NCBI RefSeq assembly: GCF_000142905.1
Contig: NW_013657632.1
Span: 296,626 to 315,632 of the forward strand
Source: Thecamonas trahens ATCC 50062
Taxonomy: Eukaryota; Protista; Apusomonadida
Reading direction: 5' to 3'
Length of the DNA: 19,007 nt
Position 1 is the stretch's first letter, and each line of letters starts with the position of its first letter. Made by a program: the position numbers and the translations under genes. The notes beneath the pieces are model-generated. The model did not search any database. It saw nothing but the letters and a program-made list of their open reading frames with translations, and was not told where the DNA came from. Below are positions 3,905 to 19,007 of the stretch, in pieces.

Positions 3905-5286
3905 ATGTCTGTCAAACTCCATGTTCAACACGTACCTGTGGGTGACCCATTTTCGAGGTGCTGTTGGGGAGTGTTGGTGGTCCAGACAAGGTCGGGACCG
4001 TGTCCGGCATGTCCGACAACGACACGCTGGTTGCGTTGGTGCACCGATGCCCGCATCTGAAGTGCATCGATTTGACTGAAAGCGGCGAGGACATCACCGA
4101 TAGCGCACTCATGGTAGTTGCTGTCGACTGCCATGGACTTGAGGTCCTTGTTCTCAACAACTCTTCCGCCATCACCGACGACGGCCTACTCGCTGTCGTC
4201 CGCAACTGCCGGCATCTACGAACTGTGCTCATCAAGTTCTGCCGAACATCTCGTCCGACATGCCAGATATCATCGCCAGTGTGAACCCCAATGTGACGGT
4301 GACCATGACGGGTCCTTTGCGCTACGAGTCAGCGCATGCTTTGGCTCGACTCGAATCGAGATCCACGCTTGCCGCTGCGCCTATGACTCGGCAACTTCAC
4401 GGCTTTCTGTGGAACTCCGATGAGGTGCTCCCCATCGCAGCAGCCACAACCACTCCAACAGGCAATCTTAGGAGGCATGTTTGGTGGGGGCGGCGGTGAT
4501 GACGGTGGTTCGACATCCAAGTCCTTGGGGGATCCCGGTCGGCAGCCCCTGGCCACTTCGATTACCAATAGGTACCAGTCTGCCGGCTCATCGCCTACCA
4601 GCAGTCCGCCGCCGACATCGTCTCAGACAAACGAAGAAAGCGCTTCTGGAGGCTACATGGCGTCACCATCGTTTATCCAGCCGCCAGCTACAAACATTTC
4701 CGGTAGGAAGTGGGACGTGTTCATCTGCCACGGCGGCGGGGACAAGGGTATCGCCAGAGATCTCTACAACAACCTCACCGGTCGCGACCTCCGTGTCTTT
4801 CTTGACATCAAGTCGCTTGACGGTGAGCGCTGCGCAACCCCGCGTGACATGGTTGCCCACGTCAAGGCGTCATCGGTCGTTCTCGTCCTTGTTTCCAAGT
4901 TCCTCATTGTTTCGCGCTGGGCCATGGCTGAGGCCAAGGCCGCAGTGGATGCTGCCGACGCCAACCGTGGCAAGGTCTTCTCTGCCATCATCGGCAGCGA
5001 CATTACGTCGACCACGCTCCGCAACATGAAGGAGCATGATGTCAACAGCATCGACCATCCGCTCATCCACGCCATGGACAACTTCTTCCAAACCGACGCC
5101 CATCACGATCAGTGGTCCAACTGGCGGCACGAAAAGTTCACCCCTGCCCACAAGACCGATCACGTCGCCACTGTCTTCCGCCTCCTCGAGTACGGTTTCG
5201 CCCCGTTTGGTCCCAGTGACCAGCCGTCGGAAATCGTGAGCGAGATCGCCAAGCGAACACGCATCTTGGCGACAGGCTCCCCGTAG
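3905..5286 (+). CDS. Cys-containing LRR - low-complexity linker - TIR domain protein, frameshifted in this assembly (pseudogene or sequencing errors)
   Basis: Three LRR_CC/AMN1-like repeats (RCPHLKCIDLT..ITDSAL; DCHGLEVLVLNNSSAITDDGL; NCRHLRTVLIKFC). Adding one C at ~4242 gives CPNISSDMPDIIASVNPNV. A further frame change at 4387-4499 leads into the TIR ORF 4420-5286. The start at 3905 needs another 1-nt correction at ~3946; ATG 4009 is an alternative. Confidence 0.7.
4711..5283 (+). other. TIR domain (TIR_2-like) with conserved catalytic glutamate
   Basis: WDVFICHGGGDK (betaA), LRVFLD (betaB), SSVVLVLVSK (betaC), SRWAMAEAKAA matching the SxWCxxEL motif; Glu codon at 4930-4932. Confidence 0.88.
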
Positions 5287-15383: not shown

Positions 15384-17400
15384 CTAGCGGCGTGCTTGGA
15401 AGATGGTGATGGCCTTGTCGACGTGCTGGAGGATGTTGGCGCGGTCGGCCTGGAGGGCGGCGATGTTGCCCGTGGCGATGGTGACGTGATCCCTGACGTC
15501 GGCGAGCTCGGCCTTGGTGTCGGCGAGCTCGGCCTTGGTATCGGCGAGCTCGGCCTTGGTGTCGGCGAGCTCGGTCCTGGTGTCGGCGAGCTCGACCTTG
15601 GTGTCGGCGAGCTCGGCCTTGGTGTCGGCGAGCTCGGCCTCGAGTTTGTCCACGCGAGTGGAGGACCCAGCAGAGGCGCCTGCACCGCCGCCAATGTCGC
15701 CACCAGCAGCGATGGTCTCACGGACGTGGTCAGCAACACGCTCCGGGATAGAGCTTGTACCAACGATGAGGTTGTAGACTTCTTTTGCAGCCGCGTTGGT
15801 GTCGCTTCCAGGCTTGTTGAGCACAGCCGAGGCAATTGACATGGCCGTCTCGCCGTTGGTCCCGAGAGCCCACACATCGGCACCCGCGGCGAGCAGTGCC
15901 ATGGTTGCGAGGATGTTGGAGGGCGAGACAGCGATGTGGAGCGGGCGCAGTTCAAGGGACGGCTCGAGGGCATTGATGTCGGCGCCGGAGTTGATGAGGA
16001 AGGTGAAGACTGGGATGGAGAACGGGATTGTGTCTGCGGCATGAAGGACGATGAAGAGGGCGAGGGTGGCCTTATTGATGCCGCTGGTTAGCTCGGTGGC
16101 GCCGTCGCCATGCTCGCGGATCCAGGCAACCATCGCAGATGAGAACGCTGGAGATCGCTCCACGGGAGCAGCTACGTACACGTGCGTGTTGTCCGGCTGC
16201 AGCGTGAAGGGATCGAGACCAACTCCGCCCAGCTCGGCCATAGCCTCAGCTGTCAGCTGGTTCGCGGCGATAATGGTGTCGAGCACAGTGGCGCCGTTTC
16301 CGTCGACGGCAGACTGGTCGAGGACGACATCCAGGGCGGCGACTGCCTCGAGGAGAGCCTTGAGGGCACCGTGCTCCGTGTTGGCAGCCGCGACATGAAT
16401 GACGGGCGTATTGAATGTGGGTTCAACAGCGTTGACGTCTGCACCAGCGGTGACGAGCTCGGAGACGATGTCGGCTGAGATCGGGACGGTCGGTGAGGCG
16501 CGGAGGGCGACAAAGAGGGCGAGGGTGGCCTTGTTGATGCCGTTGGCGAGCTTGGTGGCGCCGTCAGCGTTGGCCTGCAGCGACTCGATCATGAGGTCGA
16601 CAAAGACCGGCGCAGAGGATGCGGGCGAATGCACATACGCGTGCTTGTTGTCATCATCGAGATCGTAGAGGTCTGCGCCGTTGGCAAGCAGCGTGTTGAG
16701 CGCGCCGAGGGAGAGGAGGTTACAGCGGTCTATGGCATGCACCGGATGGGGCACATGGGCCTGAGCAACGTCAAGCAATGCATGGGCGTGCTGCGATGCA
16801 GGGAAGTCTGGTTGGGCGATGGTAGTGCGCGCGCGACCCAAGTCGAGGGTAACCTTGGAGCAGTTGTCCAAGCGGACGGTTGTGAGGTTGGGGCAGCCAC
16901 CGGCGAGGGCGACCACTGCCGCATCGGTGATGTTGAAGCAGTTGCCCAAGAGGAGGATTGTGAGGTTGGGGCAGCCACCGGCGAGGGTGACCACTGCCGC
17001 ATCGGTGATGTTGGAGCAGTTGCCGAAGCCGAGGAATGTGAGGTTGGGGCAGCCACCGGCGAGGGCGACCACTGCCGCATCGGTGATGTCGGAGCAGTTG
17101 TACAAGTAGAGGGTTGTGAGGTTGGGGCAGCCACCAGCGAGGGCGACCACTGCCGCATAAAATGATGTTGGAGCAGTTGTACAAGTCGAGGAATGTGAGG
17201 TTGGGGCAGCCGCCGGCCACGGCCACCACTGCCGCATCGGTGATGTTGGAGCAGTAGTCCAAGCGGAGGGATGTGAGGTTGGGGCAGCCACCGGCGAGGG
17301 CGACCACTGCCGCATCGGTGATGTTGGAGCAGCTAAACAAGTCGAGGGTTGTGAGGTTGGGGCACATCTCCGCCACCACCATGGCCATGGCGTCGGTGAA
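15384..17400 (-). CDS. LRR (7 x 26 aa, Cys-containing) - duplicated ankyrin module - coiled-coil protein; one frameshift at 17159-17162; start uncertain
   Basis: CPNLTxLxLxxCSNITDAAVVALAGG repeats span two ORF frames joined at a +1 lesion. Ankyrin motifs LVTAGADVNA..TPVIHVAAA, LINSGADINA..RPLHIAV, LLAAGADVWALGTNGETAMSIA. C-terminal (ELADTKA)n heptads. The 5' end lies next to the assembly gap. Confidence 0.85.
15498..15640. repeat. 21-bp coding tandem repeat x7 (ELADTKA heptads)
   Basis: gtcggcgagctcggccttggt units start at 15498, 15519, 15540, 15561, 15582, 15603 and 15624. Confidence 0.95.
16850..17400. repeat. 78-bp coding tandem repeat x7 (LRR units)
   Basis: Anchor gtgaggttgggg at 16882, 16960, 17038, 17116, 17195, 17273 and 17351; spacings 78, 78, 78, 79, 78, 78. 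Confidence 0.96.
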
Positions 17401-17552
17401 GGACTCATTGTAACTCGCCCCCACCTCGCCCACGCCCACGCCATTCCCCAGACCCCCAATCCCTCCTCCACCGACCTCGCCTCCTTCACGACCACCACTC
17501 GTCCAGCCCCGGTCCAACCATACTCCCTCTCCTATCTATCAGAGAGAGAGGA

Positions 17553-17690
17553 NNNNNNNNNNNNNNNNNNNNNNNNNNNNNNNNNNNNNNNNNNNNNNNN
17601 NNNNNNNNNNNNNNNNNNNNNNNNNNNNNNNNNNNNNNNNNNNNNNNNNNNNNNNNNNNNNNNNNNNNNNNNNNNNNNNNNNNNNNNNNN
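17553..17690. other. Assembly gap (138 N)
   Basis: Run of N. Confidence 1.
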
Positions 17691-19007
17691 CACCATACTC
17701 ATTGCCCACTTACACATCCTCTCAATCACCCTCTGTACACCCCCGTGGTCCCGTATCCATCATTCCCGTCAGACCACCCCGTCACCCTCCATTGGTCCTC
17801 CCGGCACTGTAACGTCAATCTCGGCACTGTGACGTCGTGCCCTTCCCTGCCCGTCTGCCGAGGAAGCCCACCACACCGCCACGCCGCCCTTTCCGCCGCT
17901 CCGTCGGATGGGTCACTGCCTTGATCACTTCCGCAATGGTCTCGCTCTTCCCTCTCCGGGGCATGCCTCTCCGTCGGCCTCTCTCCAACCCGTCCTTCTG
18001 CCGGACGTCGTCGATGACTTCTGCGGACATGCCCAACACGCTGCTGTGCTCGTGGGTGTCTCGATCAACGTCTGCTGGCCAATGCGCCTCTGTCTTGCCT
18101 AACTTCTGCTGATGGGCTGGTTGGGCTTGGCCGGCCGATCGCCGGGGGGTGGGTCACTGTGCTGATCGACGCGATCCGGCAGGCAGAGATGGCGAGCGCG
18201 ATAGATGCGAGGACATCTCGAGCCGTCAAGCGAGCGGGGCGATCGGCTGGTTGGGAGCTGGAGATGGCCGAGCGCACTTGGTACAGGCACTGTGAGATGC
18301 CCGATCTGTCCTTGAGCTCGGCTGATCGATGGGGATCATGGTCGATGTCGAAGCTGGCGTCCCGCGTGAGGATGGATGAGGTCGAGCGCCATGCGGCTTG
18401 AGCCTGTGGTCTGTGTCAGCAATCACTAGAACCGATGCGATGACGATGGGTACTACATGTTGTGTGACTTTCACAACTGCTGGACGTGTGCCTGTAGGAA
18501 GGACGGCATGTTGTGGGAAAGTGCCGATGCTGTGCGGCGGGCGTGGGCAGGGGGGGTCTCTGTAGTGATGCCGATTGCGATCGGGGCGATGGCCGCGGTG
18601 GAGCGCCGATGAGCCTTGCGGCGATGGCTACGACATGACGTGAGGGGGTAAATGGTCATCGGGCGGTTGGTACTGGGGATGTGGGCCACGGACTGAGTAC
18701 ATAGTTGTGACGAGCGCTGCGATGCGAGTGCGTCATGGGGCGTGGCCACGACTGAGGTGTATGCGTGGATGGCTTTATCGACTGGCCAGTTGCTGGACAG
18801 CAGGCTCGTGACCAGCAAGCAGGTGATGGGATGGGAGAGGATGGATATCTGCATCATCCGTCAGTCTGTCCGATGAGTGTGTGTCGATGCTTGGATGGAA
18901 TGGGAAGGTGGAGGGAGCGGAGCAGTGATCACCAGTTCGTTCGGCGACGGACGATTCAGAGCTACGACAAGTATAACTCCACACACCGCTTCTACACGGA
19001 TCTCCGC

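What the first reader, a model, noticed from the sequence alone, without database searches (positions are those of the whole stretch)
16850..17400. LRR array with near-identical scaffold DNA and hypervariable ligand-binding face
Seen: seven 78-bp units share an almost invariant DNA scaffold (CSNITDAAVVALAGGCPNLT), while the exposed x positions of xLxLxx differ in every unit: TLDLFS, SLRLDY, FLDLYN, TLYLYN, FLGFGN, ILLLGN, TVRLDN. Known: these positions form the concave binding surface of LRR solenoids. The same pattern (concerted scaffold, diversified contacts) marks variable recognition systems such as lamprey VLRs, high-internal-conservation repeats of fungal NLRs and Ectocarpus ROCO LRRs. 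Inference: a recombination-shuffled, diversifying non-self sensor in a protist, not an ordinary FBXL-type LRR; no F-box is visible.
Basis: partly seen in the sequence, partly recalled or inferred. Interest (0 to 1): 0.85.

Follow-up and report, generated by a model that had tools for sequence, protein, structure and literature searches.

The report
Hypervariable subtelomeric LRR gene, broken copy
Near a chromosome end of the marine flagellate Thecamonas trahens lies one apparently frame-broken copy of a gene family of about a dozen members whose nearly identical leucine-rich repeats differ almost only at the four residues lining the predicted binding groove, which is how fast-diversifying recognition receptors evolve, although what these proteins bind is unknown.

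Summary
On the minus strand, 16848-17364 holds six full 78-bp units and one partial unit of a cysteine-containing (FBXL-type) leucine-rich repeat.

The genome (Thecamonas trahens ATCC 50062) has at least 11 such arrays of 5 to 31 units. In 99 clean units, variation sits at codons 6, 8, 10 and 11. On a unit tree these codons show 86 nonsynonymous and 5 synonymous changes, against 49 and 33 in the scaffold. Synonymous rates are equal.

Some units carry the scaffold of another locus, one of them in this window. Array lengths also differ between loci. Both point to shuffling.

No copy has an F-box. The family design is a short cap, the LRR array, ankyrin modules and a long coiled coil, with no signal peptide. 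The genes lie in duplicated blocks that run into the canonical subtelomeric repeat.

The window copy has three frame-breaking indels. It is a pseudogene or badly sequenced.

"Diversifying, recombining LRR family" is well supported. "Non-self sensor" remains inference.

The scan found this family before on a paralogue (s1-742072). I found no paper on it.

The parts
16848..17364 (-). LRR array: six full 78-bp (26-codon) cysteine-containing LRR units plus a seventh partial unit. The units occupy 17287-17364, 17209-17286, 17130-17208, 17052-17129, 16974-17051, 16896-16973 and 16848-16895.
   Evidence: TRF period 78, score 759. Unit register and translations. nhmmer with a unit profile. Pfam LRR_4 and LRR_6 above threshold.
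17159..17162 (-). Frame break in unit 3. Four T on the coding strand stand where all other units have CCG, a net +1 with three substitutions.
   Evidence: The 79-bp spacing, the open frames switching here and the unit comparison. The public gene model P0003 hides the break with an 'intron' that removes one unit. Read laying was inconclusive.
17209..17286 (-). Unit 2 (SLRLDY, ending AVAGG), a 'foreign' unit that carries the scaffold type of the divergent C73a array.
   Evidence: It has 1 scaffold difference from the nearest C73a unit. The median for main-clade units is 6.
17365..17521 (-). N-terminal cap region of about 55 codons in paralogues, starting from the family start codon at 17519-17521. 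Relative to paralogues it is broken here by 1-bp deletions at about 17514/17515 and about 17461/17462.
   Evidence: DNA alignment with C102, C60, C61 and C70. In the intact C61 paralogue the region is modelled as two extra strand-helix units, not an F-box. No Pfam F-box hit at E up to 10.
15663..16847 (-). LRR C-terminal cap followed by two ankyrin-like modules of about 135 residues each.
   Evidence: Pfam Ank_4 at 1.5e-9 and Ank_2 at 2.6e-7, both above threshold. Paralogues carry one to three such modules. The Atlas returns only generic ankyrin clusters.
15387..15662 (-). C-terminal coiled coil. It includes a 21-bp heptad repeat (ELADTKA, 6.8 copies, at 15498-15640). The stop codon is at 15384-15386.
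   Evidence: TRF period 21, score 258. In the paralogue model this is a single 90-residue helix with pLDDT 81-91. Heptad number varies between paralogues.
17554..17691 (.). Assembly gap (run of N) just upstream of the gene.
   Evidence: Direct reading.
17692..19007 (.). Upstream flank shared at 90-98% identity with at least 12 other contig-end loci. The contig ends at 19007.
   Evidence: In C61 the same flank runs on into the canonical subtelomeric repeat.
13765..15383 (.). Downstream flank of the duplicated block, shared at 93-97% identity with C60 and C102 and in part with C73c, C61, C34 and C96.
   Evidence: blastn of the window against the other loci.

Best explanation
The array belongs to one copy of a subtelomeric gene family of Thecamonas trahens. 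This copy is probably defective.

The family encodes cytosolic proteins built as follows: a short LRR-like cap, 5 to 31 FBXL-type 26-residue LRRs, one to three ankyrin modules, and a long coiled coil.

Shown here:
- The 78-bp units are kept almost identical at the DNA level within and between arrays.
- Units are gained, lost and moved between chromosome-end loci.
- Amino-acid change is concentrated at unit positions 6, 8, 10 and 11, and more weakly at 13 and 14. Nonsynonymous change there exceeds the neutral expectation. The synonymous rate is the same as in the scaffold.

Inferred:
- The variable positions lie on the strand and the loop after it, which line the concave face of the solenoid. 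Each array therefore presents its own binding surface.
- Unequal crossing-over and ectopic gene conversion between subtelomeres, together with diversifying selection, generate a germline repertoire of binding specificities.
- The coiled coil probably makes the protein oligomeric, and the ankyrin modules offer a second interaction platform.
- The most likely role is intracellular recognition of variable ligands, in defence or self/non-self discrimination. Output would go through partners, since no enzymatic or death-type domain is present.
For: Repeat and register.

Family: 133 units in at least 11 loci.

Architecture and intact paralogues. Pfam finds LRR_4, LRR_6 and Ank and no F-box.

Variation:
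- Entropy and diversity peak at codons 6, 8, 10 and 11, in the first and second codon positions. The scaffold varies mostly synonymously.
- Tree-based counts give 85.8 nonsynonymous and 5.2 synonymous changes at the x codons (omega about 4.0, binomial p 1.3e-4 against neutrality). The scaffold gives 49 and 33 (omega 0.56). Fisher p is 2.4e-8.
- Synonymous change per synonymous site is 2.2 at the x codons and 1.84 in the scaffold.

Homogenisation and shuffling:
- Scaffold DNA identity within arrays is 94-98.5%, against 90-95% for the non-repeat gene parts between loci.
- The old paralogue C73b has units only 60% alike in DNA.
- Four identical 78-mers are shared between loci, and 99 units carry 46 x-motifs.
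- Four units with the C73a-type scaffold sit inside other arrays, one of them in this window.
- Each window unit has its nearest relative in a different locus.

Structure: the LRR part of the intact paralogue has pLDDT of about 90, strands at unit positions 6-8, and a 90-residue C-terminal helix. The best structural matches are FBXL2, FBXL17, FBXL5 and Skp2 LRRs.

Subtelomeric position:
- The loci are at contig ends with the 5' end outward in most.
- The shared flank runs into a repeat of 40 or more copies at contig ends, in a fixed orientation.
- That repeat lies beside TTAGGG arrays on C1 and C2.

An environmental relative (P0005) shows the same pattern with new x residues.
Against: - There is no evidence on ligand, expression, localisation or variation between individuals.
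- No signalling or effector domain is present.
- This copy has three frame-breaking indels, and several paralogues are broken too (C74, C113, C70, C60). Part of the family may be decaying.
- Units are related by recombination, so the tree-based counts are approximate. The tree was built from the same sites.
- Arrays in a gap-rich draft assembly may be partly misassembled.
- Telomere repeats are not present on the LRR-bearing contigs themselves. The subtelomeric position rests on homology of flanks.
- The hydropathy check is crude. The highest 19-residue window scores 1.73, inside an ankyrin helix.
Confidence: 0.6

Rival explanations
1. A working, diversifying binding family whose role is not defence. 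One possibility is a variable substrate or cargo adaptor for protein turnover, localisation or the cytoskeleton. Others are mating or kin recognition, or a selfish subtelomeric element.
For: The LRRs are of the type used by substrate adaptors of ubiquitin ligases. No immune-type output domain is present. Subtelomeric, copy-variable families serve many roles.
Against: Ordinary adaptors have conserved single-copy orthologues and do not show omega above 1 on the binding face with DNA-level homogenisation. A TIR-domain gene lies 10 kb away in the same window, which is only a weak association.
Confidence: 0.2
2. A decaying subtelomeric repeat family. The arrays are pseudogenic DNA spread by segmental duplication, and the variable positions simply reflect relaxed constraint on exposed residues inherited from an ancestral LRR gene.
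For: The window copy and several paralogues carry frameshifts. Remnants with stop codons exist on C49 and C44. All copies lie in duplicated chromosome-end blocks.
Against: - There are no stop codons in 99 units, and open frames reach 908-1189 codons in several loci.
- Scaffold omega is 0.56, with strong depletion of nonsynonymous change at many codons.
- Omega at the x codons is above 1, not equal to 1.
- The same pattern appears in an environmental relative with an intact 451-residue frame.
Confidence: 0.12
3. An ordinary F-box/LRR (FBXL) substrate receptor of an SCF ubiquitin ligase, as the public annotation says. The F-box would be missed because of the gap or an unseen exon.
For: The public name is 'F-box/LRR-repeat protein 2'. 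The best sequence and fold matches are GRR1, EBF, FBXL2 and Skp2.
Against: - Intact, gap-free paralogues start about 55 codons before the first unit at a conserved start codon.
- Pfam finds no F-box at E up to 10 on those N-termini.
- The model shows strand-helix LRR-like units there, not a three-helix F-box.
- None of the Thecamonas family proteins in the database carries PF00646 or PF12937, while the fungal and plant hits do.
Confidence: 0.05
4. Targeted hypermutation produces the variable codons. This would be a retroelement-guided system that mutates adenines, as in bacterial diversity-generating retroelements, or a deaminase-driven process.
For: Consensus x codons are AAC, TAC and ACC, with an almost fixed third-position C. 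That superficially recalls diversity-generating retroelement targets.
Against: - Variation is not restricted to adenines. The second-position C of codon 6 and the first-position T of codon 10 also vary.
- Scaffold adenines are invariant.
- The synonymous rate at the x codons equals that of the scaffold.
- No reverse transcriptase or template repeat was seen in the blocks.
- The differences are germline differences between units and loci.
Confidence: 0.02

Closest known systems
High-internal-conservation (HIC) repeats of fungal NOD-like receptors (HET-E, HET-D and NWD family; Dyrka et al. 2014, PMC4986451)
   Same: Tandem repeats are kept nearly identical. A few hypervariable positions under positive selection map to the binding face. 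Repeat number varies and units are exchanged between paralogues.
   Different: In fungi the repeats are WD40, ANK or TPR, and no LRR was found in 5,616 fungal candidates (PMC4986451). Here the repeat is an LRR. There is no NACHT or NB-ARC domain and no N-terminal effector domain. The host is an apusomonad and the loci are subtelomeric.
LRR-ROCO and NB-ARC-TPR candidate receptors of Ectocarpus and other brown algae (Zambounis et al. 2012, PMC3341825; PMC11378527)
   Same: A protist family in which LRR units are shuffled to give a repertoire of candidate receptors.
   Different: According to those papers' titles and abstracts, shuffling there works through exons and alternative splicing and the LRRs are fused to a ROC-COR GTPase. 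Here the arrays are continuous open frames without introns, fused to ankyrin modules and a coiled coil.
Variable lymphocyte receptors of lampreys and hagfish (from general knowledge)
   Same: LRR cassettes with a conserved scaffold and variable concave-face residues are combined in different numbers and orders.
   Different: VLRs are assembled somatically, are secreted or membrane-anchored, and have LRRNT and LRRCT caps. Here diversity is germline, between loci. There is no signal peptide and no sign of somatic assembly.
F-box/LRR (FBXL) proteins such as FBXL2, Skp2 and GRR1
   Same: Cysteine-containing 26-residue LRR type, with the best sequence and fold matches.
   Different: There is no F-box. 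The repeats are homogenised at the DNA level with a diversifying face. The C-terminus carries ankyrin modules and a coiled coil. This is a multi-copy subtelomeric family rather than conserved single-copy orthologues.
Subtelomeric contingency gene families (var, VSG, MSG and similar; from general knowledge)
   Same: They sit in duplicated chromosome-end blocks with a fixed orientation, undergo ectopic exchange between ends, and include many broken copies.
   Different: Those encode surface antigens of parasites. These are predicted cytosolic proteins of a free-living bacterivore.

Membership tests
F-box/LRR-repeat (FBXL) proteins | N-terminal F-box domain (PF00646 or PF12937) that binds Skp1 | tested here: not met
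   No F-box hit on three whole paralogues at E up to 0.05, nor on their first 60 residues at E up to 10. The N-terminus is modelled as strand-helix units. The database records of the family carry no F-box Pfam.
F-box/LRR-repeat (FBXL) proteins | Cysteine-containing LRR units of about 26 residues | tested here: met
   The unit is 26 residues with the L-x-x-L-x-L-x-x-C-x-x-I-T-D pattern. Pfam LRR_6 and LRR_4 match. Foldseek's top hits are FBXL2, FBXL17, FBXL5 and Skp2.
High-internal-conservation (HIC) repeat proteins as defined for fungal NLRs | Internal repeats over 85% identical over at least 100 residues (PMC4986451) | tested here: inconclusive
   Mean pairwise unit identity is 85-88% in C34, C113, C61, C70 and C74 over 130-800 residues, so the criterion is met there. 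It is 79% for the five clean units of the window array and 80-81% for C73a and C73c.
High-internal-conservation (HIC) repeat proteins as defined for fungal NLRs | Hypervariable, positively selected positions on the binding face | tested here: met
   Omega is about 4 at codons 6, 8, 10 and 11, against 0.56 elsewhere. The strands fall at unit positions 6-8 in the model.
High-internal-conservation (HIC) repeat proteins as defined for fungal NLRs | Repeat-number polymorphism between alleles or individuals | not testable with these tools
   Only variation between paralogues was seen (5-31 units). The available runs are short assembled contigs confounded by paralogues.
NOD-like receptors / STAND proteins | Central NACHT or NB-ARC nucleotide-binding domain | tested here: not met
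   Pfam finds only LRR, ankyrin and coiled-coil-type matches in the whole proteins.
Variable lymphocyte receptors | Signal peptide, LRRNT and LRRCT caps, and somatic assembly from flanking cassettes | tested here: not met
   The N-terminus is not hydrophobic. There are no LRRNT or LRRCT Pfam hits. The arrays are complete germline open frames. Somatic assembly itself was not testable.
Subtelomeric gene family | Position within the duplicated blocks next to telomere repeats | tested here: inconclusive
   All loci lie within about 25 kb of contig ends or on small contigs. The shared flank continues in C61 into a repeat of 40 or more copies at contig ends, found beside TTAGGG arrays on C1 and C2. 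No LRR-bearing contig itself reaches a telomere repeat.

The most novel reading that the evidence does not exclude
Thecamonas trahens, from a lineage usually placed close to animals and fungi, keeps a germline repertoire of intracellular LRR receptors. The repertoire would be diversified by unit shuffling between chromosome ends and by selection on the concave face. These receptors would work without any NOD domain, signalling instead through coiled-coil oligomerisation and ankyrin-bound partners. That would be an LRR-based counterpart of the fungal HIC-repeat receptors and an independent form of innate non-self recognition in a free-living unicellular eukaryote.
Probability: 0.3. Interest if true: 0.8.

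Novelty: new variant of a known kind. Interest (0 to 1): 0.62.

Why it matters
Repeat arrays that are homogenised at the DNA level while their binding residues diversify are a hallmark of fast-evolving recognition systems. In the literature read here they are described for the WD40, ANK and TPR repeats of fungal NLRs. LRR versions are known from brown-algal ROCO genes and jawless-fish VLRs.

A subtelomeric LRR version with no NOD domain, in an apusomonad, would do three things:
- It would widen the taxonomic and architectural range of such systems.
- It would show that FBXL-type cytosolic LRRs can be used in this way.
- It would give a small, culturable protist in which to ask how unicellular eukaryotes recognise viruses, prey or kin.

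There is also a practical point. The public name 'F-box/LRR-repeat protein 2' is misleading, and the public model hides a frame break behind an invented intron.

Tried and rejected
- Read laying. Four runs were laid on 15384-17553 (2,170 letters, within the operators' limit). All were short assembled contigs of 80-360 bases mixed with paralogues. The bin holding the unit-3 break had depth 0 to 6.5 and no indel row, so the break is neither confirmed nor refuted.
- Metagenome scans. An exact scaffold pattern found nothing. The profile scan chose a coiled-coil pattern and returned one irrelevant locus. No independent environmental sample of units was obtained beyond P0005 and P0006.
- More genome DNA. 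C39 was identified through P0128 instead.
- Retroelement-guided or deaminase-type hypermutation. Rejected on base spectrum and equal synonymous rates.
- F-box. Rejected.
- Surface antigen or adhesin. Unlikely, because the N-terminus is not hydrophobic and there is no convincing membrane span. No dedicated predictor was available.
- Transposon cargo. No transposase, reverse transcriptase or terminal repeats were seen in the Thecamonas blocks. Only the environmental contig L050 has an integrase-like ORF next to the gene.
- Distant relatives of the ankyrin and coiled-coil part. Beyond the family only generic ankyrin and coiled-coil proteins turned up.
- Handling of the frame break. The two pieces of the window gene either side of the break were searched separately and were never joined.
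- Complex prediction for the coiled coil. Not run, because oligomerisation is a side inference.
Full report
**1. What is in the window**

Tandem Repeats Finder reports a 78-bp period at 16855-17364 (6.5 copies, 87% matches, score 759). The coding strand is the minus strand. With each unit starting at the Cys-Pro-Asn-Leu-Thr codons, the units begin at 17364, 17286, 17208, 17129, 17051, 16973 and 16895.

Each unit is a 26-residue cysteine-containing LRR. Pfam LRR_4 and LRR_6 match above threshold. The seventh unit keeps 13 codons and then becomes the C-terminal cap.

Downstream on the same strand come:
- two ankyrin-like modules (Ank_4 at 1.5e-9, Ank_2 at 2.6e-7);
- a coiled coil that includes a 21-bp heptad repeat at 15498-15640;
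- the stop codon at 15384-15386.

**2. This copy is broken**

Unit 3 has four T at 17159-17162 where every other unit has CCG, so the frame shifts by +1. The family start codon is present at 17519-17521. Aligned with paralogues, however, the N-terminal cap has 1-bp deletions at about 17514/17515 and about 17461/17462. A run of N follows at 17554-17691.

The public model of this gene (P0003, 'F-box/LRR-repeat protein 2', 642 residues) starts at an internal Met. It jumps the break with an 'intron' that deletes one unit.

Laying four public runs on 15384-17553 did not settle whether the indels are real. Only short contigs confounded by paralogues were available. I searched the two pieces either side of the break separately and never joined them.

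**3. The family**

The organism is Thecamonas trahens ATCC 50062. Earlier notes of the scan gave the same lead. The window is the last 19 kb of contig C48.

A unit profile finds 133 units in at least 11 loci:

| Locus | Units |
|---|---|
| C34 | 24 or more |
| C74 | 31 |
| C113 | 15 |
| C70 | 6 |
| C73 (three loci) | 18, 6 and 7 |
| C61 | 5 |
| C60, C102, C96, C87 | cut by assembly gaps |

Intact, gap-free members (C61 with 659 residues, C73a with 855) define the design:
- a conserved start, then about 55 residues;
- the LRR array;
- a cap;
- one to three ankyrin modules;
- a variable number of heptads;
- a conserved C-terminus.

Older paralogues have the same design but ordinary, non-homogenised LRRs. 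These are C73b, whose units are 55% alike in protein and 60% in DNA, and C39 (equal to P0128), which is 38-44% identical. Remnants with stop codons lie on C49 and C44.

**4. No F-box**

- Pfam finds none in three whole paralogues, nor in their first 60 residues at E up to 10.
- An AlphaFold2 model of the C61 protein has LRR pLDDT of about 90 and overall pTM of 0.36. The ankyrin part is poorly modelled.
- In that model the N-terminus forms two further strand-helix units. The strands fall at unit positions 6-8, and the last 90 residues form one helix.
- Foldseek's best matches are the LRR domains of FBXL2, FBXL17, FBXL5, Skp2 and KDM2.

The repeats are therefore FBXL-type in sequence and fold, but the protein fails the defining test for an F-box protein. 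The N-terminus is not hydrophobic. The highest 19-residue hydropathy window (1.73) lies in an ankyrin helix that contains His, Asp and Pro. I read the protein as cytosolic, with the caveat that no dedicated predictor was available.

**5. Where the variation sits**

In 99 clean units with no stop codons, amino-acid entropy is:

| Unit position | Entropy (bits) |
|---|---|
| 10 | 3.1 |
| 8 | 2.8 |
| 11 | 1.8 |
| 6 | 1.3 |
| 14 | 1.15 |
| all others | 0.7 or less |

Nucleotide diversity at codons 6, 8, 10 and 11 lies in the first and second codon positions. Scaffold codons vary mostly at synonymous third positions.

I counted changes on a tree of the 83 distinct units:

| Codons | Nonsynonymous | Synonymous | Omega |
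|---|---|---|---|
| 6, 8, 10, 11 | 85.8 | 5.2 | about 4.0 |
| 22 scaffold codons | 49 | 33 | 0.56 |

- The binomial p against neutrality at the four codons is 1.3e-4.
- The Fisher p between the two classes is 2.4e-8.
- Synonymous change per synonymous site is alike (2.2 and 1.84). This argues against a local mutator and for selection.
- The four most variable positions all belong to the five canonical x positions of the LRR consensus (p 3.3e-4).
- From established LRR structures, these residues are on the strand and the following loop, which line the concave face. The strand assignment agrees in the model.

Caveats: units recombine, the tree uses the same sites, and draft arrays may contain assembly errors.

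**6. Homogenisation and shuffling**

- Scaffold DNA identity within arrays is 94-98.5%. Between loci it is 96% (excluding C73a). The non-repeat parts of the same genes are 90-95% identical.
- The 99 units carry 46 different x-motifs. Several motifs recur in different loci, and four 78-mers are identical between loci.
- Long arrays contain amplified blocks. In C74, four motifs account for 23 of 27 units.
- Four units inside main-clade arrays carry the scaffold type of the divergent C73a array, with 1-2 differences against a median of 6. One of them is window unit 2 at 17209-17286.
- Each window unit has its nearest relative in a different locus.

Together with the range of 5 to 31 units, this is the signature of unequal crossing-over within arrays and ectopic conversion between loci.

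**7. Genomic setting**

The window from 13765 to its end belongs to a block shared at 90-97% identity with ten or more loci. In most loci the gene's 5' end points to the contig end.

In C61 the same upstream flank continues for 10 kb into a repeat with 40 or more copies. Almost all copies lie within about 5 kb of contig ends, on the minus strand at contig starts and the plus strand at contig ends. On C1 and C2 the repeat lies right beside the TTAGGG arrays. The family is therefore very probably subtelomeric. No LRR-bearing contig itself reaches a telomere tract, so this rests on homology.

**8. Relatives elsewhere**

Outside Thecamonas, whole-protein hits are ordinary F-box LRR proteins that match the LRR part only. 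The ankyrin and coiled-coil part finds only family members and then generic ankyrin or coiled-coil proteins.

Two metagenome contigs carry family members:
- L051 (JGI) is 99% identical to C73b. It is intact where the assembly's copy is frameshifted.
- L050 (ENA) encodes a 451-residue member with three units. Its scaffold DNA is again nearly identical, and its x residues are new.

Marine and estuary metagenomes hold 27-49% of the sampled words of the window's ankyrin region.

**9. Interpretation**

The evolutionary claim is well supported: concerted scaffold, diversifying concave face, and unit exchange between subtelomeric loci. The functional claim is inference by analogy with fungal HIC-repeat NLRs (PMC4986451), brown-algal LRR-ROCO genes (PMC3341825) and VLRs.

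The proteins lack any NOD, TIR, death or kinase domain. Any signalling must therefore go through oligomerisation or partners. A TIR-domain gene lies at 4420-5286 in the same window, but this is weak association.

Rivals are:
- a non-defence adaptor role;
- a decaying repeat family;
- a missed F-box;
- targeted hypermutation.

The last two are largely excluded (sections 4 and 5).

**10. Novelty**

A full-text search for the species name together with 'leucine-rich repeat' gave six papers, none about this family. The HIC literature states that no LRRs occur in fungal NLRs.

The scan had already reported a paralogue (s1-742072, 18 units, which I take to be C73a) with the same reading. My analysis agrees with it and adds:
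- the subtelomeric anchoring;
- the foreign-unit evidence;
- the older non-homogenised paralogues;
- the broken state of this copy.

I rate it a new variant of a known kind.

Noticed in passing
window 4420-5286 (+): A 288-residue open frame with a TIR domain (TIR_2 at 9.7e-12, TIR at 3.9e-5), about 10 kb from the LRR gene. I did not check the LRR part.
   Followed up: partly
L045:5400-8416 (C61:236400-239416) and 40 or more other contig ends: A canonical subtelomeric repeat of about 3 kb, 83-91% identical between copies. It is oriented minus at contig starts and plus at contig ends, and lies next to the TTAGGG arrays on C1 and C2. It would serve as a marker for chromosome ends in this assembly.
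   Followed up: partly
L033:1142-1870 (+) (C74:91142-91870); similar ORFs in L034, L035 and L044: An open frame in the distal shared flank with a weak RNase III domain match (E 7e-5, below Pfam's threshold). It may be a Dicer-like remnant carried in the subtelomeric block.
   Followed up: partly
L037:3900-4040 (C73b) compared with L051: The assembly's C73b copy ends early after an apparent frameshift. A 99% identical JGI metagenome contig encodes the full-length protein (P0006). This is either an assembly error or a strain difference.
   Followed up: partly
L031:7643-10000 with L048:1-2652, L037:5484-9599, L042:1-1404: Large open frames with FG-GAP/VCBS-like repeats (a recurring Asp-Gly-Asp-Gly ... 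Trp-Tyr-Glu-Asn pattern) lie on the interior side of several family loci. In P0006 such a frame is read through into the family gene.
   Followed up: no
L050:2-601 (+): In the environmental contig, the family member is preceded by an ORF that looks like the C-terminal part of a retroelement integrase. This rests on inspection only.
   Followed up: no
window 15498-15640 (-) and paralogues: The 21-bp heptad repeat (ELADTKA) of the coiled coil varies from about 3 to 8 copies between paralogues. The number of ankyrin modules varies from 1 to 3. Length variation is therefore not confined to the LRR array.
   Followed up: partly
   Followed up: partly
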